From positions 186,001 through 250,000 of the IMG/VR virus record IMGVR_UViG_3300049001_000044: DNA of 64,000 bases. One strand, written 5' to 3'. Positions 8,901 to 27,891 of the stretch are shown here, in pieces. The position numbers and the translations under genes are program-made. Under the pieces are notes generated by a model. The model was not told the origin of the DNA. It worked only from the letters and a program-made list of their open reading frames with translations, and made no database searches. Within the stretch, counting starts at the first letter, position 1. Each line of letters opens with the position of its first letter.

Positions 8901-9092
8901 TTATTTCTCTGTCATCGAATACTTGTACGAAGTGTAGTTGATAATTCGCCCAGTATCACAAGTCATTCTTAGATGCCTATCATTTACCTTTTCTAACTTA
9001 CCCCCGCATACTTCTTGCGGGGTGTCTTGATAATGGCGTTCGCCACAGGCAGCAAGTAAGGAAACTAAACTGACGATTACAATGGTCTTCAT
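8901..9092 (-). CDS. small lipoprotein
   Basis: Signal peptide with LAAC lipobox. Confidence 0.6.
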   Translation of the reverse strand: MKTIVIVSLVSLLAACGERHYQDTPQEVCGGKLEKVNDRHLRMTCDTGRIINYTSYKYSMTEK

Positions 9093-9111
9093 TTAAAGCT
9101 TTCAAATCTGG

Positions 9112-9186
9112 TGGTGGTTCCAGCGGGGATCGAACCCGCGACCTTAGGTTTTAGAGACCCGGCTCTGCCAACTGAGCTATGGAACC
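9112..9186 (-). tRNA. tRNA-Sup(CUA) amber suppressor 1
   Basis: Cloverleaf GGTTCCA/TGGAACC, loop CT-CTA-AA, A73, encoded CCA. Confidence 0.85.
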
Positions 9187-9264
9187 TGGTGGCGTGTATC
9201 GGACTCGAACCGATGACCAAGGAGTTTAGAGGTCCCTGCTCTACCAAACCTGAGCTAACACGCC
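9187..9264 (-). tRNA. tRNA-Sup(CUA) amber suppressor 2
   Basis: Cloverleaf GGCGTGT/ACACGCC, loop CT-CTA-AA, A73, encoded CCA. Confidence 0.85.
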
Positions 9265-9287
9265 GTTTTGTTGCTGTGCACAATGAA

Positions 9288-9317
9288 ATTATACTCAACA
9301 CAGCTTGAAGTAAAAAC
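9288..9317 (-). promoter_or_regulatory. early-type promoter GTTTTT-N18-TATAAT driving the suppressor tRNAs
   Basis: Repeated motif; a late-type ATAAATA also lies at 9328-9334. Confidence 0.7.
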
Positions 9318-9326
9318 TAGCAACCT

Positions 9327-9638
9327 TTATTTATCAGCGAAGTGCAGTTCGCTGGGGGATGCGAAGCGTCCTTGATCTGCCCGCCATGGAGTCGCTGTTT
9401 TCTCAGCTTCTCTCCATCCCACAGTCTTTACAATGTAGCAAGCATTACCTGCGTAGTTACTTTGAACATCTGTGATCTCATGGAGTTCAAGCGAGATAGT
9501 TCCTCGGTCCTTCAAGAATTTCTTTCTCAGTCTTGGGTCAGAAGGAATGTTGAACCGAACAGTCCTCCCAATGTTCTTTCGCATCTCTTCATCGTCATCC
9601 CCACCAGCTCTGTCGTCAAAGAATTCCCAAAGTTTCAT
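9327..9638 (-). CDS. hypothetical protein
   Basis: 103 aa, starts MKLWEFFD. Confidence 0.65.
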   Translation of the reverse strand: MKLWEFFDDRAGGDDDEEMRKNIGRTVRFNIPSDPRLRKKFLKDRGTISLELHEITDVQSNYAGNACYIVKTVGWREAEKTATPWRADQGRFASPSELHFADK

Positions 9639-9687
9639 CTCTTCTCCTATGGATTTAGGGAGCTTCGTTTGAAGCTCCCATCTCTAT

Positions 9688-9981
9688 TTACTGACTAGCC
9701 TCGTACTGTTCCTGTGCCTGCGCCTTCATGGAGATACGGCCATCGATCATGTACGTTGCCTGATTACGGAGACCGTCTCGTTCGCTGCGCAGCCTTTCTA
9801 CTTCTTTCCATGCTGGCCAGTAGGTGCCTTCACGGGTGCTAGATTTTGCGAATACTTTCTGTGCATCATTGAATTGCTTCCTTACGTCGCGGATTTTCTG
9901 CGAGAGGTCTTTGTAGTCTGCTTTCCACTGAGCGGCTGCGGCGATGTAGGTTTCACGGGAATTGAAGTTGAAGTAGGTCAT
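9688..9981 (-). CDS. coiled-coil hypothetical protein
   Basis: 97-aa ORF with GGAG RBS. Confidence 0.7.
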   Translation of the reverse strand: MTYFNFNSRETYIAAAAQWKADYKDLSQKIRDVRKQFNDAQKVFAKSSTREGTYWPAWKEVERLRSERDGLRNQATYMIDGRISMKAQAQEQYEASQ

Positions 9982-9996
9982 GTTTTGCTCCTTGGA

Positions 9997-10545
9997 TTAT
10001 TTGAGAAATTTCTTTGCTGCTTGAATGAGTCGCTTGGTTTTGATTTTGTAGCTCTGCGAATCCTTACCACCAAACATAGATGCGTTGGCGTTGATCTCGG
10101 CCCATGCAGTGAAGAAAAGGATGGGTGCGAGTGGGTGCTTGATCAGCTCGAGTAGTTCATCACCACGAGCAGTGTGAAAGTCCATGTCTCGACGAATGAG
10201 GTTGGTAGTGAAGAGGTCGTCGGGAAACAAATGACTGTACTGCTGAGCAGAGATGTTAGCATGATCTGGGAAGTGGCGCTTGCCATCTTCATCAATCGTC
10301 AACGTCAAGTGCTTGCCACAATCGTGATAGACGTGGTATGGTTGAAGCACCGAAGCTGGAGGAAGGCTAAACTTGGAGTAGATTTGTTGAAGCTCAGTTG
10401 GAGCTTCTCCTTTCTCAAGTTCATCGATCAGCTCTTTGTACTTCTCGTGCACAAGTTGGCCGTGTTGGAGCATGTTCAGGTTAGGAGCCTGAAGACAAGC
10501 TTCCATTGCGAGGTGGAGTTCTTCAAGGGAGTTTTCGTACTTCAT
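9997..10545 (-). CDS. HD-domain phosphohydrolase-like protein
   Basis: Start MKYENS; YHDCGK and HANIS motifs; ATGA-coupled to the upstream Pth gene. Confidence 0.65.
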   Translation of the reverse strand: MKYENSLEELHLAMEACLQAPNLNMLQHGQLVHEKYKELIDELEKGEAPTELQQIYSKFSLPPASVLQPYHVYHDCGKHLTLTIDEDGKRHFPDHANISAQQYSHLFPDDLFTTNLIRRDMDFHTARGDELLELIKHPLAPILFFTAWAEINANASMFGGKDSQSYKIKTKRLIQAAKKFLK

Positions 10546-10886
10546 GCTGCGTCTCCTTGCGTAGGCAGCTTCCAAAGCTGCAAGCCTTTCAGGAGATTGC
10601 GATTCTCTTCAGTGAGAATGCAAGCAATCGCAGTCAATCCCCAATCTTTGTACGGTTCGTGGAACTCGGCAGTTGGGATTCCATTCTCATTGAGCGTGGC
10701 GCGAAGCTGTTCCAACTTCTGCTTGTCTCGAATGGTGAGATGGATGTACGACGGATGATGGTCAGCAGGGCGACCAAAAGTGTATGCGTGTTCGACGGCG
10801 GCATGGCCAGCTTGAACAGCTTGTTGCGCGAGTGGGATGTCTCGGCGCGAGATGGTGTACAGGTAGGTTTTGGAAATCTACAACAT
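10542..10886 (-). CDS. Pth2-like peptidyl-tRNA hydrolase with in-frame TAG at codon 3
   Basis: GGAG RBS, then ATG TTG TAG ATT TCC AAA... open for 115 codons to TGA; translation has RRDIPLAQQAVQAGHAA and EPYKDWGLTAIA. Confidence 0.75.
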
Positions 10887-10919
10887 TTTTGTTTTCTCCG
10901 TTAGGTTTTAAAAGTCAGC

Positions 10920-11033
10920 GTTGGTGCGAAAATTCGCATCTAGCAGCGTGAGTGAACGTACAGGTTCCCGGTCCAGTCAAATGGGTTAAATTGGGATGTC
11001 GACGGCGCTAACCCATCAACATTTCGCACCAAC
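10920..11033 (-). other. structured 5' leader closed by a 12-bp stem
   Basis: GTTGGTGCGAAA/TTTCGCACCAAC inverted repeat; inner GATGGGTT/AACCCATT stem. Confidence 0.55.
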
Positions 11034-11050
11034 TATTTACTGACAGGAAT

Positions 11051-11080
11051 ATTTTATCACTTCTGATTCCTAATGAAAAC
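11051..11080 (-). promoter_or_regulatory. early-type promoter GTTTTC-N18-TAAAAT
   Basis: Repeated motif upstream of the Pth leader. Confidence 0.6.
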
Positions 11081-11111
11081 TTTTATTTTCGTCAGTTGTC
11101 AAAAGCCTCAG

Positions 11112-11408
11112 TTAAAAATCAAGTAACATGTTTTGGCGACGCTCCTCAAGAAGATCTAAGAGGACGTCGCCATGGCATTGCTTTGGGTAGCACCAACAAC
11201 CAAGTGTCTTGCCTTCTAACTCATGAAGGTCGGCGAGAAGATGTGGGCTGCTTAGTATGTGTTGTCGATACGCTTCGATCGCTTCCGATCTTGTGCGCTT
11301 TCCTTCTTCTACTGGATGAGGATTGCCCCACTTACTTGGCCTACCAATGTAGACGTCGTATGGAGCTCTCTTGAAGTGAACTAATCTGGGTCTGGGTCTT
11401 CGTCCCAT
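11112..11408 (-). CDS. DUF4326 domain protein
   Basis: YIGRPSKWGNP...GKTLGCWCYPKQCHGDVL. Confidence 0.85.
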   Translation of the reverse strand: MGRRPRPRLVHFKRAPYDVYIGRPSKWGNPHPVEEGKRTRSEAIEAYRQHILSSPHLLADLHELEGKTLGCWCYPKQCHGDVLLDLLEERRQNMLLDF

Positions 11409-11675
11409 TTCTTAGTCCTCTCAATCTCATCCAATAAGTGCTGGAAGATGTCGACGAAACGCCAGTCTATCCGATGCGCAAGTGACAAACCTCTTTCAGA
11501 GATTCGGCGAAGCACTTCTAGTTGATCGTTCCCGGCCATAGTACGCCTTGCTCTTTACCAGTATAGGTGATGTCGTACTTCCTACATGCTGGGCAGAGAG
11601 CGTAATTGCCAAACGCAACCGCGAAGTTCGTGCCCAACCATTTACAATCTCGGCAGAAGTACAAACTTCGGTAGG

Positions 11676-12026
11676 TCACCATGATATGCGAATGTAGCGG
11701 AAATAGGATGGTGGCATGTTCGCGACAGTGTCCTCGTCATCCATACAGCCCAGCATTCTTCTGCTTACTTCCTGTTTCTGTGTGACGAACTCTGTGCGAT
11801 AGCCGAATGACTTCAACCTCTCCAATACTTTCAACATGATGGGAGTTTCTTTCAGGACAGCAGAGTATCCTTCGCCTCGAACCATCAACTCGTCGTTGTA
11901 GATGTCAAATGAGGTCTTGCCTTCTTCAGCTAGCTTGCGGACTTGTGGGTCAATCCACTTGATGAGACGATCAGCGACCATGTCGGAGGTCTTGACCAGC
12001 TCTCTTGCTTCACTGGCCTTAATCAT
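11676..12026 (-). CDS. hypothetical protein
   Basis: Likely start MIKASEARELV within the tracked ORF. Confidence 0.65.
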   Translation of the reverse strand: MIKASEARELVKTSDMVADRLIKWIDPQVRKLAEEGKTSFDIYNDELMVRGEGYSAVLKETPIMLKVLERLKSFGYRTEFVTQKQEVSRRMLGCMDDEDTVANMPPSYFRYIRISW

Positions 12027-12182
12027 TCGAGAACCTCGACTGCAGAACGAGGAGAGGGTCTGGGCTTTTCTTCGGATGGATAATGAAGCCATTGCCGATG
12101 GTGCCCAAAATTTCGTATCGCTCACCCACCGTCAGGTACTCTTTCAGCTTGTTCCATTTGGAGTCAGGCATGCTTTGCAAGA

Positions 12183-12377
12183 TCATAGTACAACCCTTTC
12201 AAAGGTGATGCCGCCAGGGTAGCGGCGTTCGACTTCCACTTGAAGTCGTTTCGGGGTATCTTCAGTTACGTGGTGCACGATGGTGACTTCATCACGAAAT
12301 CGTGCAGGAACCAGACTCTCGTAGTGGCGAGCAAGTTGCTGACTACGAGTTGGTTGACGACCAGGAGTTTTGATCAT
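12183..12377 (-). CDS. small hypothetical protein
   Basis: ORF track. Confidence 0.45.
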   Translation of the reverse strand: MIKTPGRQPTRSQQLARHYESLVPARFRDEVTIVHHVTEDTPKRLQVEVERRYPGGITFERVVL

Positions 12378-12388
12378 GAGGAGGGAAA

Positions 12389-12464
12389 TGGTCCGCCCAG
12401 CTGGATTCGAACCAGCGACCCACGGATTAGAAGTCCGTTGCTCTATCCACTGAGCTATGGGCGG
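12389..12464 (-). tRNA. tRNA-Arg(UCU)
   Basis: Canonical cloverleaf, loop CT-TCT-AA, CCA. Confidence 0.92.
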
Positions 12465-12584
12465 TCTTACTATTTATCAGAAAAGAAAGTGGACGATGGC
12501 CCAGATGATCCCAACTGCGGTAGCACCAATTACGATGCAAATGCCAGCAATCATCAGCAGGAAATTCTCAAAAAGCTTAATCAT

Positions 12585-12932
12585 TTATCGGATCGACTTG
12601 AGGTTTTCGGAAGGATGAGCGAGCAGGAAGTTCGCCATCGAGATGCCCAGCGCCTGTACCGACTTGGCGACTTCGATCGCCTTCAGCGCTTTCACGACGT
12701 TCTGTTTTTGAGCCTTGTGGCTTTCGTAGTTGTTCACCGCATCGGTTGCGATCTGCTTGGCCTTTGCTAGGTCACGCTCCTCGCAAACAGCCTGAATAAC
12801 GTCCATCGTGAAAAAGCCTGCGTCCATCGGTACTACTTGAGCGTTCATCTTTAAATCTCCATTTTCAACACCACTAAATTTGTGGTATGAGTTATTGTAA
12901 AATTTCCTCACAATAACAAAAACTGTATTCAA
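12585..12932 (-). CDS. hypothetical protein
   Basis: 115-aa ORF in operon. Confidence 0.55.
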   Translation of the reverse strand: MNTVFVIVRKFYNNSYHKFSGVENGDLKMNAQVVPMDAGFFTMDVIQAVCEERDLAKAKQIATDAVNNYESHKAQKQNVVKALKAIEVAKSVQALGISMANFLLAHPSENLKSIR

Positions 12933-13420
12933 AGAATAATGAACGACGTTGGCGGAGTACCGGTCAGGATGTGAATTGCTTTTCTCATATCAGGGAATGC
13001 AAGACCGCAGGATGGATCGACGCGAACAAAATTCTGCATCTGCTCCTCGAGCATGTCGCTGCTATCGTCAATGATGACGTAGGCTTCAACCTCATTGTTG
13101 TCGAGCCACTCCTGAATCTCAGTACCTCGGTTTCCGCCAGTCGTGCCAGTGACGCCGATCACTTCGCCTTCCACGCCCATCAGCAGAAGGGCCTGCTTAA
13201 CACCATCAAAGCCCAACACTTTGCGATTAGCAGAGGAGACAACGATCTTCGCGCCTGTCTCTTTGATGATCTTGTTGAGGATTGCGATGGCGACTGGATC
13301 TGCTTTTGATAGGAGATAGTTCAGACGATACTCGCCTGGAAAAATCTCCCTCATAGGAAGAGCAAAGATTGAACGATCGGAGTTCAAGACTCCATCGATG
13401 TCTAGGAAGATTACTTTCAT
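12929..13420 (-). CDS. HAD-family phosphatase (Swiss-Army-Knife RNA-repair HAD-like)
   Basis: MKVIFLDIDGVLN...IVVSS...YVIIDD. Confidence 0.8.
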   Translation of the reverse strand: MKVIFLDIDGVLNSDRSIFALPMREIFPGEYRLNYLLSKADPVAIAILNKIIKETGAKIVVSSANRKVLGFDGVKQALLLMGVEGEVIGVTGTTGGNRGTEIQEWLDNNEVEAYVIIDDSSDMLEEQMQNFVRVDPSCGLAFPDMRKAIHILTGTPPTSFIIL

Positions 13421-13550
13421 ATCAGTCCCATGCACTTGCCACACTTCACGCAGTGTTGGATTTTGCCCATGCCCGAATCTCGCATGCGCCATTCTCCTGC
13501 TTCATGTTGACACCTACGCGTCGTGATGAAGAACCATTTAAGCCAATTCA

Positions 13551-14021
13551 TCACCACCCCTTCGCAGCAACCCAAATGTCCGTCTCCAGTTCCCATGAGT
13601 TCGTAAGCTCAGGGAAGTTCTTGCGAACTTTTGTGTAGACGAGATGATTAGGAATACGACCTGGAGATTCAGGATGATTGACAATCTCCCATCCAAGGTC
13701 GCCAAGCAGAGAGACCACTGCACCAGAACGGCAGATGCCAGCGTGGCAGTTCACCCATACATTCTTCTTCAGCTCCCTTGCCTCCTTGATGAAGGCAGCA
13801 ATCTGCGCTGCTTGATAGGCAGCGATTGCGTTGCCGTTGATCTCGTCGTTGGTGTCGTCGAACTTTTGGAAGAGAACTTTGGCGAAAGGATATGCGAGCT
13901 TAGCATCTTGACCACCCTCATCGGTGATAGAGATAAGCCAGTCATCTTCCGTAACCGGGAATGGGAAGCTGCGAGCACCGACCTTCATGACGGCGGCGCG
14001 TGGGAAGTTTGCAGTTTTCAT
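13551..14021 (-). CDS. dual-specificity/tyrosine phosphatase-like protein
   Basis: VNCHAGICRSGA CX5R motif. Confidence 0.8.
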   Translation of the reverse strand: MKTANFPRAAVMKVGARSFPFPVTEDDWLISITDEGGQDAKLAYPFAKVLFQKFDDTNDEINGNAIAAYQAAQIAAFIKEARELKKNVWVNCHAGICRSGAVVSLLGDLGWEIVNHPESPGRIPNHLVYTKVRKNFPELTNSWELETDIWVAAKGW

Positions 14022-15637: not shown

Positions 15638-15868
15638 TTATTTATCCTTCCAGTCGGACAATTTAACAATCACGACCACGAACAGCCCAATTGCCGCCAT
15701 TGTTAGCAGAAGTGGAAGCAGCCCACCGACCACCACGAGGATGGTACCGACGATTGCAGCGACGATGCCAACGCCGTACGCAAGTGCGACGAGCAGGAAG
15801 GTTAGGATAAAGGGAGCAGCCAACACTCCCAAAATCCCGATCAGAATGTAGAAGAGTACTTTGATCAT
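15638..15868 (-). CDS. small membrane protein
   Basis: Highly hydrophobic 76 aa. Confidence 0.6.
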   Translation of the reverse strand: MIKVLFYILIGILGVLAAPFILTFLLVALAYGVGIVAAIVGTILVVVGGLLPLLLTMAAIGLFVVVIVKLSDWKDK

Positions 15869-16731
15869 ATGACGATAGGTTCGATTTCATGGACACCCAA
15901 CTCATTGACTTTCCAGAACTTGTCAGTGAGGGGTTCGGTTACAGTGAGAGCAGCCCAATCATCTGGTTCTCGGCTCTTGCCGTTCGCTACTTCCCTGATG
16001 CTACGATATGCGCCAGTGTCGAGGTTGGTCTGACCCTTAAAGCGGGTTGGGTGGCGCATGATAGTGTGGCCGCTGTAGATGTGGGACAGCTTCGGACCAA
16101 ACATTGTTCCAGCGTCGCTGCCTTCGAAGTACTTGCTGTGACGATCCTTGTCGTACTTCGCACCATACAGAGGCAGGAAGATGTATCGACCCCAGATGAT
16201 CGACTCGCCGTCTGCTGAGGGAGCTCGCGCAACATAGTTGAGAGTCTCCTCATTGTCTAGATCTTCATCACTCAGTTCGACAGGCGAACTCAGCTCTGCA
16301 TGGATGACGTGGAAGAATCCACCGTCTTGCTTTTTAACCGTCAGCATCAGGGGCAGTTCATTTGCCTTCTTCACTGCATCGCGAACGACAGCCGCTTCAT
16401 CGTCAGGGTTGTGAGGGTATGCGTATTGGATACCCCACGAACCACCGTTAGGTGCCCACCACATTCCAGTGGGACCGTTAAAGAAGAAGTCAGCCATCAG
16501 CTGCTCGTGATTACCTCGAACGGCGAAGAACCACGGCTCATAGATTAGCATCAGGCATTCGAGGCTGTTAGGCCCCCGATCCACCAAGTCGCCAACCGAA
16601 AAGATGCGGTCCTTCGTCTTGTCGAAGTTGATGAAGGCCATGAACTGGTACAGACGTTCGATGGCACCATGCAGATCGCCGATGACGAAGTCACGGCCGC
16701 CATTTTCATTCTTACCAATTCGGTGTCTCAT
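15865..16731 (-). CDS. metallophosphoesterase (Ser/Thr protein phosphatase, NinI/PrpA-like)
   Basis: GDLHG, GDLVDRG, RGNHE and GHT motifs. Confidence 0.9.
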   Translation of the reverse strand: MRHRIGKNENGGRDFVIGDLHGAIERLYQFMAFINFDKTKDRIFSVGDLVDRGPNSLECLMLIYEPWFFAVRGNHEQLMADFFFNGPTGMWWAPNGGSWGIQYAYPHNPDDEAAVVRDAVKKANELPLMLTVKKQDGGFFHVIHAELSSPVELSDEDLDNEETLNYVARAPSADGESIIWGRYIFLPLYGAKYDKDRHSKYFEGSDAGTMFGPKLSHIYSGHTIMRHPTRFKGQTNLDTGAYRSIREVANGKSREPDDWAALTVTEPLTDKFWKVNELGVHEIEPIVI

Positions 16732-22854: not shown

Positions 22855-22931
22855 TGGTTGCGGATGGTTGGATTCGAACCAACGACGCACGGGTTATGAG
22901 CCCGCTCTTCTGACCACTGAATTACACCGCA
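22855..22931 (-). tRNA. initiator-type tRNA-fMet(CAU)
   Basis: GGG/CCC in the anticodon stem, loop CT-CAT-AA, CCA. Confidence 0.8.
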
Positions 22932-24182: not shown

Positions 24183-24192
24183 ACAATTCTAC

Positions 24193-24275
24193 TTAGCTCG
24201 ACGTTCTGGAATCGAACCAGAGTTTTGGCCATCAATCGTCTGCTCCGCGAAAAGCAAACTACCCCGTCGAGCTAA
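24193..24275 (-). ncRNA. tRNA-like RNA with an 11-bp terminal stem and T-arm, no CCA
   Basis: TTAGCTCGACG/CGTCGAGCTAA; TCTGG-TTCGATT-CCAGA. Confidence 0.5.
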
Positions 24276-24282
24276 AAAGAAT

Positions 24283-24627: not shown

Positions 24628-24862
24628 ACAAAGTGCTCTTACGCATACAACTTGATTACTACAGAAGGAGCCCGCGCTCAACCTCCTGTTCATCAAATTG
24701 TTTCGCTGCATTTCAGCAGCTCATCAGTGCGTTTAATTTACCACGAACATAGTGAAGAGAATCGAACTCTCCATCCCTGTCGAAGGGGACATTCCAATCC
24801 TTGCTACTTGTCTCGATCCTTCCAACCACTGTCGAGAACCCATTGGGTAGGGTGGTAAAACT

Positions 24863-24960: not shown

Positions 24961-25025
24961 ACCAACAAAGTAAGTGTTCGAAGGGGTAATCGTTAAAAGG
25001 GATAACCTTCGATCGTCCGGTTGGT
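24961..25025 (-). ncRNA. Y RNA-like element Y1 (minimal)
   Basis: ACCAAC-CG-GACG-ATCGAA-GG-TTATCC...CC-TTCGA-..CTTT-GTTGGT. Confidence 0.65.
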
Positions 25026-25304: not shown

Positions 25305-25373
25305 TGACAACAAAAGATAAGGTGACGGAGAGGTTTTCGCAAAATGAAGGTAACCATCACCGGTCGGTTGTCA
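25305..25373 (-). ncRNA. Y RNA-like element Y2 (minimal)
   Basis: TGACAAC-CG-ACC-GGTGAT-GG-TTACC...CC-GTCACC-TTATCTTTT-GTTGTCA. Confidence 0.7.
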
Positions 25374-25410: not shown

Positions 25411-25543
25411 AATTTGTAAGAGCAACAAAAAGTGCCGTCGGGCATTGTCCACCTTAACCATAGGACATGTAGGAATCGAACCCACTCGGTTTTTATTTCC
25501 ATTAAAAAGATAACCAACTAGCTAGCGGTTACTCTTACAAATT
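25411..25543 (-). ncRNA. Y RNA-like element Y3 with T-arm and D-like hairpin
   Basis: 16-bp terminal stem, CG bulge, GG-TTATC, GTGGG-TTCGATT-CCTAC. Confidence 0.7.
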
Positions 25544-25616: not shown

Positions 25617-25745
25617 TGGTTGAGAATGTCTGGATTCGAACCAGATCCACGCCGATATGAGAGGATAACCAATCACAAGCCGGTTACGTAAGCAACAAAA
25701 ATTAGCGATCGATGTTTACGTGTGCTGCCATTACACCACATCTCA
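25617..25745 (-). ncRNA. Y4: CCA-ended tRNA body with a Y-like module replacing the anticodon loop
   Basis: Acceptor, D and T arms, CCA; insert GATCGC-TAATTTTT-GTTGC-TTAC-GTAAC-CG-GCTT-GTGATT-GG-TTATCC. Confidence 0.7.
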
Positions 25746-25805
25746 ATTGAACTTGCTGTGCTGCAAGAGATGATATTTTAACTTGAACTCTTGCAACTAA
25801 AAACT

Positions 25806-25944
25806 TGGTGGAGTTGGGTAGGATTCGAACCTACCTAAGCCAGAGGCGTCGCCTTTACATGGATAACCAATTACGAGGCGGTTGCATAACAACAAAAAGT
25901 TGTAATCGGGGATTTCGATGGGTTTTCCAATTCCCTACAACTCC
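25806..25944 (-). ncRNA. Y5: CCA-ended Tyr-like tRNA body with a Y-like module replacing the anticodon loop
   Basis: GGAGTTG/CAACTCC-A-CCA; insert CC-GATTAC-AACTTTTT-GTTGT-TAT-GCAAC-CG-CCTC-GTAATT-GG-TTATCC. Confidence 0.7.
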
Positions 25945-26072
25945 ATTCGCGTGAACATCTAGTAGTCCACTACCGATCAAAATCGTTACTGATGCCTGCC
26001 ACCATCGAGGGCGTCATTTCAGGCGAGCTCGCTATTAGCACGAGCTGGGCATTCTGTGCTGCAAGAGATGAT

Positions 26073-26102
26073 ATTTTATACCAACTGCTTGCAAATAAAA
26101 AC
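26073..26102 (-). promoter_or_regulatory. early-type promoter GTTTTT-N18-TAAAAT
   Basis: Near-duplicate of 25757-25804 (shared CTGTGCTGCAAGAGATGATATTTT). Confidence 0.6.
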
Positions 26103-26103
26103 T

Positions 26104-26180
26104 TGGTACCCACGGTGAGATTCGAACTCACATATCACAAGGATTAAGCTTGTTGCCGTTGCCAATTAGGCTACGTGGGC
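26104..26180 (-). tRNA. tRNA-Leu(UAA), short variable loop
   Basis: Loop CT-TAA-TC, A73, CCA. Confidence 0.8.
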
Positions 26181-26692
26181 AATGTTCTTCCACGCTTGAA
26201 TCCTTGGAACTGTTCGAATTGATCTGGTCTAATCAGCTTGTTGATTTTGCCGTCAGTTATCCAGAACTTGCCAAACTGCGGATTCTTGTCACCCAATCTT
26301 TTACCGACTTGGGCTTCGGAAACTTTCTTACGTTGCTCTTCAGTAAAGACATAGCCATGAACTGAATTTCTGATCTTGCTCTTGACCTCTTCGCTGTGGC
26401 TCTTGCCTTTGAAGTGTGGTCCACCTTCTCCTCCAACGCCAAGGTTGTAGGTATCAGATCGTTGAACAAAATCTTCAGTCACTAGCTCTTTCTCTTTGAG
26501 ATTCATTTCGTCCTCTGTGTCGAAGATGAAGAGAATCTCTTTCACGAAAGAGTCTTTACCGTATTTCTTGATCGCTGCATTCAGTGCTTTACCAGATCCA
26601 AAATACGAATCGTCAAGGTCAAGCGTCTGATGCTTACCAATGTAGAACTTACCGTTCGTAGTGTTGGTAATTTTGTAGATTGTGTAGAACAT
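26171..26692 (-). CDS. Seg-like GIY-YIG homing endonuclease with NUMOD3 motif
   Basis: TIYKITNTTNGKFYIGKH...YFGSG...E...YN; FKGKSHSEEVKSKI; start at 26692, TAG stop. Confidence 0.85.
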   Translation of the reverse strand: MFYTIYKITNTTNGKFYIGKHQTLDLDDSYFGSGKALNAAIKKYGKDSFVKEILFIFDTEDEMNLKEKELVTEDFVQRSDTYNLGVGGEGGPHFKGKSHSEEVKSKIRNSVHGYVFTEEQRKKVSEAQVGKRLGDKNPQFGKFWITDGKINKLIRPDQFEQFQGFKRGRTLPT

Positions 26693-26794: not shown

Positions 26795-26878
26795 TGGTAC
26801 CTCGGGTGGGATTCGAACCCACAAGGGTCTTGCTTCTAAGGCAAGTAGCTGTACCAGATTTACATTAACCACCGAGGC
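26795..26878 (-). tRNA. tRNA-Leu(UAG), short variable region
   Basis: Loop CT-TAG-AA, A73, CCA. Confidence 0.78.
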
Positions 26879-26963: not shown

Positions 26964-27084
26964 AATGAAACGAAAGTGAAAGTCGGTAAACCTCTTTCGA
27001 GGGTGTCGGACTTCGATGTCCGCTCTAGCGAGCCGAATAAGATCGGCAGCATTAACCCGATAACCAACAATCTACGGTTTCATT
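26964..27084 (-). ncRNA. Y RNA-like element Y6 with three internal hairpins
   Basis: AATGAAAC-CG...GTT-GG-TTATC...CC-GAC-TTTCACTTTC-GTTTCATT. Confidence 0.6.
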
Positions 27085-27390: not shown

Positions 27391-27514
27391 AACAAACAAA
27401 AGTAATTGAAGGAGTTGCTCTCGTCCAACTTCATGAGAGCTACTAGATTTCTCTAGTAATGGATTCGAACCATGTCATTCTTAAGCAAGGATAACCTTCA
27501 ATAAACGGTTTGTT
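27391..27514 (-). ncRNA. YrlA-like element Y7 (T-AS-D permuted tRNA domain)
   Basis: Y stem, then ATGG-TTCGAAT-CCAT, TACTAGA-GAAA-TCTAGTA and GCTCTC/GAGAGC hairpins. Confidence 0.75.
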
Positions 27515-27746: not shown

Positions 27747-27891
27747 GCAACAAAGGAGCGATAACGAAGATACCCTTTCGGGTGGACCGGCGCGTCTACC
27801 ATTCCGCCATCACCAAATTTCTTCGGTGAGAGGGACTCGAACCCTCACGTCTTGCGACACCTGTTTGAGATAATCATTATCTATCGGTTGC
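27747..27891 (-). ncRNA. YrlA-like element Y8 (permuted tRNA-Leu-like domain)
   Basis: Y stem with GA/TC covariation; Leu-type variable arm, T-arm, loop-capped acceptor stem, D arm TGGCGGAATGGTAGACGCG. Confidence 0.75.

What the first reader, a model, noticed from the sequence alone, without database searches (positions are those of the whole stretch)
25617..25944. CCA-ended tRNA bodies whose anticodon loop is replaced by the Y-like module (circular permutation)
Seen: Y4 (25617-25745) and Y5 (25806-25944) have intact acceptor stems, A73-CCA, D and T arms, and in Y5 a Tyr-type variable arm. The anticodon loop is replaced by about 50-60 nt of the same module, with the lower stem closed by a 3-4 nt loop. 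The other six copies open at the module instead. Inference: these are tRNA/Y chimeras that RNase P and the CCA machinery could process and a synthetase might charge. They could be evolutionary intermediates or decoys for anticodon nucleases, synthetases or uncharged-tRNA sensing. I cannot say whether this topology has been described before.
Basis: partly seen in the sequence, partly recalled or inferred. Interest (0 to 1): 0.8.

Follow-up and report, generated by a model that had tools for sequence, protein, structure and literature searches.

The report
tRNAs carrying a Y-RNA arm
Two genes in this soil jumbo phage's tRNA cluster are complete, CCA-ended tRNA bodies (Tyr-like and Met-like) with a conserved 53-54-base Y-RNA stem, the kind predicted to bind Ro60, grafted into the anticodon stem; known bacterial Y RNAs are not described with this layout, and it points to how they may have arisen from tRNA.

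Summary
Y4 (25617-25745, minus) and Y5 (25806-25944, minus) are real and conserved. About 40 relatives with the same layout occur in phage tRNA arrays from metagenomes.

A 54-nt (Y4) or 53-nt (Y5) module sits in the 5' strand of the anticodon stem. The 5-position stem and 7-nt loop survive (CAU in Y4, GUA in Y5). With the module deleted in silico, ARAGORN calls tRNA-Met and tRNA-Tyr.

The module is two covarying helices around a conserved internal loop. The same module, opened at the other end, forms six further RNAs in the window and at least 36 in related loci.

It is homologous to the 5' stem region of YrlA-type Y RNAs next to Ro60 (TROVE) genes. The signature CCG-N8-12-GGUUAUC is 13-fold enriched upstream of 80 phage TROVE genes. 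A covariance model built only from those Ro-adjacent RNAs finds Y4 full length (E 4e-10).

So these are tRNA/Y-RNA chimeras: unpermuted YrlA relatives with free CCA ends and an anticodon arm, a new variant of a known kind.

Ro60 binding, end processing, charging and possible excision of the module are all untested. No TROVE gene was found in the window.

The parts
25617..25745 (-). Y4: tRNA-Met-like body (anticodon CAU at 25657-25659) ending in A-CCA. The acceptor stem has one bulged U. It carries the Y module.
   Evidence: Model R1 scores 62.6 bits. Model R2, built from Ro-adjacent Y RNAs, scores 37.6 bits at E 3.9e-10 over its full length.
25665..25718 (-). Y4 insert, 54 nt. Order: UAAACA linker; helix-2 5' strand (25705-25712); U-rich junction; helix 1 with UUAC loop (25683-25696); CG junction; helix-2 3' strand (25669-25676); UUAU.
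25806..25944 (-). Y5: tRNA-Tyr-like body (anticodon GUA at 25856-25858) with a long variable arm, a 6-bp T stem, A73-CCA and the Y module.
   Evidence: Model R1 scores 60.1 bits.
25863..25915 (-). Y5 insert, 53 nt. Order: AAAUCC linker; helix-2 5' strand (25902-25909); U-rich junction; helix 1 with UAU loop (25881-25893); CG junction; helix-2 3' strand (25867-25874); UUAU.
24961..25025 (-). Open copy A: a minimal 65-nt Y-like hairpin. Its 5' part closely matches the start of a YrlA next to a TROVE gene (L323).
25306..25372 (-). Open copy B: a minimal 67-nt Y-like hairpin.
25411..25543 (-). Open copy C: Y stem plus an anticodon-like hairpin, a T arm and a closed acceptor-like stem. It has no D arm.
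26966..27082 (-). Open copy G: Y stem with a distal domain that is not tRNA-like.
27392..27513 (-). Open copy H: Y stem with a T arm, an acceptor stem closed by a GAAA loop, and a D-like arm (YrlA topology).
27747..27891 (-). Open copy I (GAUUAUC variant): Y stem with a T arm, a closed acceptor-like stem and a D-like arm.

Best explanation
Y4 and Y5 are stable chimeric RNAs: an unpermuted tRNA that carries a Y-RNA stem as a fifth arm.

Inferred steps:
- They are transcribed with the phage tRNA array.
- Their ends are matured like tRNAs: RNase P at the 5' end, and an encoded CCA at the 3' end.
- They fold into a tRNA L-shape.
- The Y arm binds a Ro60/Rsr protein, from the phage or the host, as in YrlA RNPs. 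The tRNA body acts as the effector or scaffold domain. Here that body also offers a free CCA end and an anticodon arm to tRNA-binding proteins.

Shown here:
- The Y arm branches from the 5' strand of the anticodon stem. It consists of helix 2, a conserved U-rich/CG internal loop, and a capped helix 1.
- The anatomy, its conservation, its covariation and its homology to Ro-adjacent Y RNAs.

Not shown: Ro60 binding, end processing and stability.
For: 1. Conserved family. About 40 distinct acceptor-open members sit in phage tRNA arrays on contigs up to 596 kb.
2. The module is a structured RNA.
- 95% of cells are paired, against 16-57% when the partners are slid.
- 0 of 500 shuffles reach the observed covariation score.
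- Three helix-2 pairs alternate between UA/AU, UA/CG and CG/UA.
- RNAalifold finds the same helices on its own.
- Helix 1 covaries (GUUG/CAAC, GUCAU/AUGAC, GUUCA/UGAAC) and is often capped by a GNRA loop.
3. The same module, opened at helix 1, forms six more RNAs in the window and at least 36 in related loci. Some have closed acceptor stems, so they cannot be introns.
4. Homology to Y RNAs.
- GGTTATC occurs 108 times in 57 of 80 loci within 700 nt upstream of TROVE genes on the same strand. That is 1.98 per kb against 0.156 per kb overall.
- 94 of the 108 are preceded by C-N-G 8-12 nt upstream, the same spacing as in this family.
- Rfam YrlA hits elements carrying this motif in L323 and L331 below its gathering score.
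- Model R2, built only from 28 Ro-adjacent RNAs, gives full-length hits on family members, including Y4. Scores are 46.9 to 37.0 bits, and Y4 scores E 3.9e-10. Ordinary tRNAs match only the T-arm half, at 31.5 bits or less.
5. The tRNA parts depart from decoding norms in many members.
- Roughly 8 of 30 have pyrimidine-37 or lack U33, and 3 to 4 have A34 (my reading of the loops listed).
- The Tyr group has a 6-bp T stem, and several Y4-group members have a bulged acceptor stem.
6. Published precedent. M. smegmatis YrlA is cut by RNase P and receives CCA (PMC4201824). A phage Ro60 binds phage Y RNAs and host PNPase (PMC12135203).
Against: - No TROVE/Ro60 gene lies in the 64-kb window or within about 5 kb of about 40 family loci. 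Known YrlA genes lie within 4 kb of rsr.
- The family's contigs are not among the top 80 TROVE hits of two scans. This is inconclusive, because 366 and 421 loci matched.
- Rfam's YrlA and Y_RNA models do not hit Y4 or Y5.
- The exact YrlA motif GNCGAAN0-1G is absent from the modules.
- The 3' junction is U-rich here but C-rich in the Ro-adjacent RNAs.
- The halves flanking the module rebuild a canonical 5-position anticodon stem and 7-nt loop in 23 of 29 members. The Tyr group keeps GUA. Both facts would equally fit an excised intervening sequence.
- No expression data exist.
Confidence: 0.5

Rival explanations
1. Intervening sequence. The module is cut out of the precursor and the halves are joined, or stay base-paired as a split tRNA. 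The result is ordinary tRNA-Met and tRNA-Tyr. The Y-like stem is the recognition signal for the cut.
For: - Deleting the module gives ARAGORN tRNA calls for Y4 and Y5 and for 27 of 30 relatives.
- The split anticodon stem has 5 of 5 pairs in 23 of 29 members. It shows compensatory changes across the insertion: UCG^CC/GGCGA, CCG^GC/GCCGG, CG^CCA/UGGCG.
- The insertion point slides from 27/28 to 31/32. That is awkward for a fixed three-dimensional design but harmless for something that is removed.
- RNA-repair-type phosphoesterases lie near the tRNAs: HAD_SAK_2 at 12929-13492, plus DSPc-like and Metallophos proteins.
- Relatives such as XacN1 are reported to carry several RNA ligases (PMC7824862).
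- Lak megaphages have 'enigmatic' tRNA introns, including one in tRNA-Tyr(GTA) (PMC6784885).
Against: - The same module makes free-standing RNAs and closed-acceptor tRNA-like RNAs that cannot be introns.
- It is homologous to Y RNAs, which function as stable RNAs.
- No splicing endonuclease is known in bacteria or found here.
- The distance from the 5' junction to helix 2 varies from 5 to 16 nt, which is not ruler-like.
- Many members have non-canonical anticodon loops or acceptor/T geometry.
- No joined form was seen in the runs laid on the region, but those are contigs and mostly DNA.
Confidence: 0.25
2. Working tRNAs with a tolerated extra arm. The RNAs are charged and decode on the ribosome. 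The arm emerges near the variable-arm side. It serves as a shield or handle, for example against host anticodon-stem nucleases or for phage-specific factors.
For: - In most members the arm leaves the stem at 27/28 or 28/29. This is level with the point where long variable arms emerge.
- The Tyr group keeps GUA, A73 and the long variable arm in 7 of 8 members.
- Loops of the form CU-NNN-AA are common.
Against: - Some members have the arm at 29/30 or 31/32, deep in the part of the tRNA buried in the ribosome.
- A34, pyrimidine-37, the 7/6 acceptor/T arrangement and the bulged acceptor stems are atypical for elongator tRNAs.
- Normal tRNA-Tyr (two copies) and tRNA-Met genes exist in the same window.
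Confidence: 0.12
3. DNA-level or selfish element. The module is a mobile hairpin or recombination site, reminiscent of attC with its AAC...GTT ends and 59-139-bp size range. Alternatively it is an insertion that protects tRNA genes from the homing endonucleases that crowd these arrays. The RNA is merely tolerated.
For: - GIY-YIG and EndoI-type homing endonuclease genes are the commonest neighbours: 14 ORFs in 10 loci, and one at about 26171-26692 in the window.
- The module occurs in several contexts and at several insertion points.
Against: - Conserved G-U wobble pairs hold only on the tRNA-sense strand.
- GNRA caps and covariation argue for selection on the RNA.
- The module is homologous to functional Y RNAs.
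- The family shows old, diverged sequences rather than recent identical copies.
Confidence: 0.08

Closest known systems
YrlA-type bacterial and phage Y RNAs (Rfam RF02553; Chen et al. 2014, PMC4201824; Wang et al. 2018, doi 10.1101/312249)
   Same: - Both have a helix pair with the 5'-strand signature (stem)-CCG-N8-12-GGUUAUC, followed by a small hairpin and a tRNA-type T arm, with D-arm features.
- Both occur as several tandem copies per locus, and both are phage-encoded.
- A covariance model built from Ro-adjacent examples detects Y4 and its relatives over the model's full length.
   Different: - Published YrlA has its ends in the Ro-binding stem and a closed acceptor stem. It has no free CCA and, in Salmonella, no anticodon loop.
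- Y4 and Y5 have the opposite topology: ends at the acceptor stem with an encoded CCA, a capped Y stem, and a full anticodon arm.
- They are not adjacent to a TROVE gene.
- They lack the exact GNCGAAN0-1G motif and are missed by the Rfam model.
[quoted passage not shown]
   Same: A Y RNA whose tRNA-like domain ends up with an open acceptor stem and a CCA tail.
   Different: - There the open form is a processing product made of two pieces, because the Y stem is open too.
- Here the open acceptor stem is encoded in the gene, and the RNA is a single chain with the Y stem closed.
Intron-containing and circularly permuted tRNA genes (archaea and algae, BHB-dependent) and the 'enigmatic' tRNA introns of Lak megaphages (PMC6784885)
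   Same: One structured element appears both inside a tRNA and flanking permuted tRNA-like bodies. Removing it restores a cloverleaf.
   Different: - There is no bulge-helix-bulge motif.
- The position is in the 5' strand of the anticodon stem, not at 37/38.
- The permuted copies here lack D arms or proper anticodon arms, so they are not precursors of working tRNAs.
- No splicing endonuclease is known in this setting.
Phage T4 stable RNAs rnaC and rnaD (species 1 and 2) in the T4 tRNA cluster
   Same: Small stable RNAs of unknown function in the tRNA cluster of a phage with T4-type capsid genes. rnaC has a T arm and a long extra hairpin.
   Different: The module model finds nothing in the T4 region, even with filters off. 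The resemblance is in design only.

Membership tests
YrlA / bacterial Y RNA | Encoded within about 4 kb of a Ro60/Rsr (TROVE) gene, on the same strand. | tested here: not met
   No TROVE domain appears among the window's ORFs or within about 5 kb of about 40 family loci. The rest of the 343-kb genome could not be read.
YrlA / bacterial Y RNA | 5' motif GNCGAAN0-1G in the Ro-binding strand. | tested here: not met
   The exact pattern occurs only inside ordinary tRNAs in 24.9-28.0 kb. The modules have the related AACCG(G/A)N. Ro-adjacent phage Y RNAs themselves mostly read GCCGGA or GCCGAA.
YrlA / bacterial Y RNA | Sequence and structure similarity to known members. | tested here: inconclusive
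   The Rfam YrlA model gives no hit on Y4 or Y5. A model built here from 28 Ro-adjacent Y RNAs hits Y4 over its full length at 37.6 bits, E 3.9e-10, and relatives at up to 46.9 bits. The GGUUAUC signature is 13-fold enriched upstream of TROVE genes.
YrlA / bacterial Y RNA | tRNA-like domain with T and D arms. | tested here: met
   Y4 and Y5 have both arms plus the elbow nucleotides GG and UUCGAAU.
YrlA / bacterial Y RNA | Circularly permuted topology: ends in the Y stem, acceptor stem closed by a loop. | tested here: not met
   Y4 and Y5 have open acceptor stems with an encoded CCA and a capped Y stem. The six other copies in the window do have the YrlA topology.
YrlA / bacterial Y RNA | Binds Ro60/Rsr. 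| not testable with these tools
   Needs a gel-shift assay or co-immunoprecipitation.
Canonical tRNA | Recognised by tRNA gene finders, with a contiguous cloverleaf. | tested here: not met
   Neither ARAGORN nor Rfam's tRNA model calls them. They are called only after the module is deleted in silico.
Intron-containing tRNA gene | The intervening sequence is removed from the RNA. | tested here: inconclusive
   No joined form appeared in four public runs, but these are assembler contigs and mostly DNA.
Known self-cleaving ribozymes and other Rfam families | A match to a curated covariance model. | tested here: not met
   No family matches the module at E up to 10 on a 651-nt search.

The most novel reading that the evidence does not exclude
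These genes are living examples of the tRNA-to-Y-RNA transition. A single tRNA acquired a Ro60-binding stem in its anticodon stem, and YrlA arose from it by circular permutation, rather than from a dimeric tRNA transcript. In addition, the chimeras are chargeable, CCA-ended tRNAs that physically couple a Ro60 RNP to aminoacyl-tRNA synthetases, EF-Tu or tRNA-repair and nuclease systems during infection.
Probability: 0.2. Interest if true: 0.85.

Novelty: new variant of a known kind. Interest (0 to 1): 0.68.

Why it matters
- Bacterial Y RNAs are described as tRNA mimics that lack a free CCA end and an anticodon loop. Their effector is unknown and their origin is debated.
- A conserved set of phage genes in which the same Y stem sits on an otherwise complete, CCA-ended tRNA gives a natural test case for both questions: which tRNA-binding proteins the Y RNA body engages, and how Y RNAs arose from tRNA.
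- The hairpin that YrlA papers call the variable arm looks like the retained anticodon arm. I infer this from the near-identity of the sequence downstream of GGUUAUC between the two groups.
- The motif CCG-N8-12-GGUUAUC is a practical signature for finding Y RNAs that the current Rfam model misses.
- If the rival reading is right instead, this would be a new kind of intervening sequence in phage tRNA genes.

Tried and rejected
- **Rfam.** Gathering and E-value modes gave no family for the module.
- **T4 rnaC and rnaD.** They have a similar design, but the module model found nothing in the T4 region with filters off.
- **Cultured relatives.** The closest capsids are Ralstonia phage RsoM2USA (64%) and Xanthomonas phage XacN1 (54%). 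No module was found in 132 kb of their sequence, which included 50 kb of the XacN1 repeat that carries its tRNA genes. BLAST against phage records found nothing.
- **Short-pattern scans.** The 14-base pattern scan of viral contigs looked like chance hits by my filter. That filter was too strict: one contig I dismissed (L015, IMGVR_UViG_3300012036_000267) later proved to be a real Y-RNA locus next to a TROVE gene (L331), so other real open-class copies may be among those hits. In the scan of bacterial and archaeal genomes, no hit passed the T-loop filter.
- **Permuted tRNA genes.** I considered that the open copies mature into working tRNAs. I rejected this because they lack D arms or proper anticodon arms.
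- **Pseudoknot or helix between the A-rich linker and the U-rich junction.** I found no consistent support.
- **attC-like DNA site, CRISPR-repeat mimic, hammerhead- or hairpin-ribozyme-like junction.** I considered each from the sequence and rejected them. The reasons are RNA-specific covariation with wobble pairs and GNRA caps, and no model match.
- **Neighbouring proteins.** They gave homing endonucleases, DUF7275 and a non-specific nuclease, but no Ro60 and no RNA ligase.
- **TROVE scans.** Two scans of viral contigs did not list the family's contigs. Only the best 80 of 366 and 421 matches are returned.
- **Reads.** Laying public runs on the region gave no RNA evidence either way.

Full report
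**Setting**

The window carries a dense tRNA array on the minus strand between about 9 and 28 kb. ARAGORN tRNAs.

It also encodes T4-type capsid and portal proteins. The sequence comes from a soil metagenome. It is identical, over the stretch held, to a 343-kb IMG/VR contig (L006). The nearest cultured capsids are Ralstonia phage RsoM2USA at 64% and Xanthomonas phage XacN1 at 54%.

**What is at the coordinates**

Read on the minus strand, Y5 (25944 to 25806) has these parts:
- a perfect 7-bp acceptor stem;
- UA at positions 8-9;
- a 3-bp D stem with a GG-containing loop;
- a long Tyr-type variable arm;
- a T arm with the UUCGAAU loop;
- A73-CCA at the 3' end.

Y4 (25745 to 25617) has the same parts without the long variable arm. 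Its acceptor stem is 7 bp with one bulged U in the 3' strand. Homologues L005, L136 and L214 have a bulge in the same strand.

Neither ARAGORN nor Rfam's tRNA model calls Y4 or Y5.

**The correction: the anticodon loop is still there**

It is not. The inserted block is 54 nt in Y4 (25665-25718) and 53 nt in Y5 (25863-25915). It lies in the 5' strand of the anticodon stem.

- In Y5 the stem reads UCG, then the insert, then CC. These pair with GGCGA around the loop AUGUAAA, which holds the anticodon GUA.
- In Y4 the stem reads CG, then the insert, then CCU. These face CGGCG around the loop CUCAUAU, which holds the anticodon CAU. One position, 31-39, is a mismatch.

When the block is deleted in silico, ARAGORN calls tRNA-Tyr(gta) and tRNA-Met(cat).

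**The module**

From 5' to 3' the module consists of:
- an A-rich linker (consensus N-AAACA);
- the 5' strand of helix 2 (consensus UCGNNNGC);
- a junction that ends in three to five U;
- helix 1 (GUUG-N / N-CAAC), capped by 3-6 nt and often by a GNRA tetraloop;
- the dinucleotide CG plus 2-4 nt;
- the 3' strand of helix 2, ending in UGG;
- UUAU.

**A conserved family**

I scanned public collections with the pattern TTTGTTG-N4-9-AACCG-N7-11-TGGTTATC and a close variant.
- The scans found the same layout in 5 further viral contigs and about 25 metagenome contigs.
- A covariance model of the module (R1) added about 11 more members whose helix-1 sequences differ.
- All lie in phage-like tRNA arrays, on contigs up to 596 kb.
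- In the scan of bacterial and archaeal genomes, no hit passed the T-loop filter.

Structure statistics on 32 module sequences:
- 95.3% of cells form standard pairs. When the 3' partners are slid by 1-3 columns the figure falls to 16-57%.
- 0 of 500 shuffles reach the observed covariation score.
- Three helix-2 pairs switch between UA/AU, UA/CG and CG/UA.
- A U-G, C-G, G-U trio at the base of helix 2 is nearly invariant.

RNAalifold recovers both helices without guidance.

The sequences of helix 1, AACCG and TGGTTATC were fixed by the search pattern. Their invariance in that set therefore carries no weight. The extra members found by the model show that helix 1 does covary, for example GUCAU/AUGAC, GUUCA/UGAAC and GUCGA/UCGAC.

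**The tRNA part across the family**

- The two pieces of the anticodon-stem 5' strand, taken together, give 5 of 5 pairs with a 7-nt loop in 23 of 29 members.
- The 3' edge of the insert is almost always UGG-UUAU, followed by C.
- The 5' edge moves. The insert follows nt 27, 28, 29 or, in a few members, 31.
- After in-silico deletion, 27 of 30 members are called as tRNAs.
- The Tyr-like group keeps GUA, A73, the long variable arm and a covarying sixth T-stem pair.
- Other groups share one body but differ in the anticodon: CAU, CUU, GCG, ACC, AUC, UAU, UGC, GUU, ACU, GCU.
- By my reading of the loops listed, roughly 8 of 30 have a pyrimidine at 37 or lack U33, and 3 to 4 have A34.

The anticodon arm is therefore kept as a structure. 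In part of the family it does not look like the arm of a working decoder.

**The same module in the other topology**

The window holds six copies whose ends lie in helix 1:
- A: 24961-25025
- B: 25306-25372
- C: 25411-25543
- G: 26966-27082
- H: 27392-27513
- I: 27747-27891

The related loci hold at least 36 more, from 59 to 139 nt long.

The shortest are plain hairpins. Others carry an anticodon-like hairpin, a T arm and an acceptor-like stem closed by a loop, with or without a D arm. Still others enclose a tRNA-like body or a whole tRNA, as at L004:4033.

These RNAs cannot be introns. They also lack what a permuted gene for a working tRNA would need.

**Link to Y RNAs**

The order of parts in the open copies is the same as in YrlA, as described by Chen et al. 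2014 (PMC4201824). To test the link I took the Ro60 homologue of mycobacteriophage Bxz1 (gp220). Its database cluster carries the TROVE domain. With it I collected 80 IMG/VR loci that encode TROVE proteins.

- In the 700 nt upstream of those genes, on the same strand, GGTTATC occurs 108 times in 57 loci. That is 1.98 per kb, against 0.156 per kb over all the sequence held.
- 94 of the 108 are preceded by C-N-G 8-12 nt upstream. The consensus is GAGCCGGA-N8-C-GGTTATC, with the same spacing as AACCG-N9-10-GGTTATC here.
- 55 of the 108 are followed by a T loop.

Rfam's YrlA model hits elements that carry this motif, below its gathering score: L323 at 47.5 bits (E 6.6e-8) and L331 at 34.9 bits. 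The L323 RNA begins almost exactly like the window's copy A. Both share CCGGACGAU and, a few bases on, GGUUAUC.

In L331, three tandem RNAs precede the TROVE gene. The third has helix-1 strands GAAC-CG and GUUC, as in this family.

I then built a covariance model only from 28 Ro-adjacent RNAs, running from the 5' strand to the T arm (R2). It gives full-length matches on the acceptor-open family:
- L201: 46.9 bits
- L002: 43.4 bits
- L147: 39.6 bits
- L212: 39.2 bits
- Y4 in the window: 37.6 bits, E 3.9e-10

Ordinary tRNAs match only the half of the model that includes the T arm, at 31.5 bits or less. Y5 is not aligned full length, presumably because of its long variable arm. It does carry the module by model R1 (60.1 bits).

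The hairpin after GGUUAUC is nearly identical between some Ro-adjacent RNAs and family members. For example, L337 and L199 both read GGUUAUCGCCU-N-UUAAGCGGG. I infer that the 'variable arm' of YrlA is the retained anticodon arm.

The acceptor-open, capped-stem layout was not found beside any of 160 TROVE loci.

**What argues against simple membership in YrlA**

- No TROVE gene lies in the window or near the family loci.
- The family's contigs are not in the two top-80 TROVE lists, though 366 and 421 loci matched.
- The exact GNCGAAN0-1G motif is missing.
- The Rfam model does not see Y4 or Y5.
- The 3' junction is U-rich here rather than C-rich.

**How it most likely works**

The best-supported reading is that Y4 and Y5 are stable Y-RNA variants. 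The tRNA body gives tRNA-type end maturation and a stable fold. The Y arm is the Ro60-binding element.

Unlike published YrlA, the body exposes a CCA end and an anticodon arm. Wang et al. 2018 (doi 10.1101/312249) describe YrlA as lacking a free CCA end and, in Salmonella, an anticodon loop, and as resembling a circularly permuted tRNA with a closed acceptor stem.

Two published findings are relevant:
- M. smegmatis YrlA is opened by RNase P and receives CCA (PMC4201824).
- A Thermus phage Ro60 binds phage Y RNAs and host PNPase (PMC12135203).

All functional steps are inferred.

The main rival is that the module is removed to give normal tRNAs. The clean reconstitution of the cloverleaf and the sliding insertion point favour this. 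The free-standing copies, the homology to Y RNAs and the irregular anticodon loops speak against it. RNA-repair-type phosphoesterases near the array fit either reading.

**Expression data**

Public runs gave no usable RNA evidence.
- One soil metatranscriptome contig matches only 25806-25866 and then diverges.
- Two runs labelled metatranscriptomic, but probably DNA, hold a 93%-identical relative with Y4 and Y5 side by side and unspliced.

**Verdict**

The feature is real and conserved. The claim that the anticodon loop is replaced is wrong.

I rate this a new variant of a known kind. Function is still open.

Noticed in passing
window 24695-24753 (-), within the 24628-24862 spacer: A hammerhead type III match below threshold (32.5 bits against a gathering score of 48.5, E 7e-4). 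The sequence shows both core boxes (CUGAUGA, stem, GAAAC) just downstream of a T-arm-like element.
   Followed up: partly
window 25746-25805 and 26050-26103 (-): A repeated promoter-like spacer (TTGCAAG, then about 17 nt, then TAAAAT or TATAAAAT, then ATCATCTCTTGCAGCACAG) lies upstream of Y4 and of a leader of roughly 100-130 nt before Y5. My reading of the sequence; the promoter scan tool was not run.
   Followed up: no
window 25945-25990 (-); L003 upstream of its Y5 homologue: The last roughly 35 nt of the leader before Y5 (GAUCGGUAGUGGACUACUAGAUGUUCACGCGAAU, which includes a small hairpin) are identical in L003, although the RNA bodies differ. In 93%-identical relatives (runs X19 and X20) a tRNA abuts Y5 instead.
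   Followed up: partly
window 26171-26692 (-): A GIY-YIG/NUMOD3 homing endonuclease gene (SegE-like) sits inside the tRNA array, as segB does in T4. Seg-like and EndoI-type endonuclease genes are the commonest neighbours of the family in other loci.
   Followed up: partly
window 12929-13492 (-), 13551-14021 (-), 15865-16731 (-): A HAD_SAK_2 domain (the HAD phosphatase of 'Swiss Army Knife' RNA-repair proteins, E 1e-25), a DSPc-like phosphatase and a calcineurin-like phosphoesterase lie next to tRNA-Arg(tct).
   Followed up: no
window 9112-9264 (-): Two adjacent tRNAs with anticodon CUA (amber-suppressor type; ARAGORN labels them Pyl). XacN1 also has two adjacent tRNA-Sup genes (L261 36047-36205).
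   Followed up: no
window 24183-24282 (-): Another uncalled tRNA-like element: a 9-bp closing stem (AGCUCGACG/CGUCGAGCU) encloses a T arm (UCUGG-UUCGAUU-CCAGA). It has no Y module.
   Followed up: no
window 22859-22930 (-) and 26798-26860 (-): Rfam's tRNA model matches two places that ARAGORN does not call (52.5 bits, and 25.5 bits below threshold).
   Followed up: no
L174:1184-1240, L212:3253-3309: The capped module also occurs as a free hairpin, closed at the other end by a 5-bp stem (CCCAC/GUGGG), directly 5' of an ordinary tRNA(CAU). This is a third context for the same element.
   Followed up: partly
L258 (Bxz1) 9000-13000: Rfam's YrlA model at its gathering threshold finds nothing around the Ro60 gene of mycobacteriophage Bxz1. 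Mycobacteriophages that encode Ro60 are reported to carry YrlA-like RNAs, so the curated model appears narrow.
   Followed up: no
L367 (IMGVR_UViG_3300031957_002643, 335 kb) 900-1400: A jumbo-size viral contig has four tandem Y-RNA-like elements (GAGCCGGA...GGUUAUC) upstream of its TROVE gene. Ro60/Y RNA systems therefore do occur on contigs of this size class.
   Followed up: no
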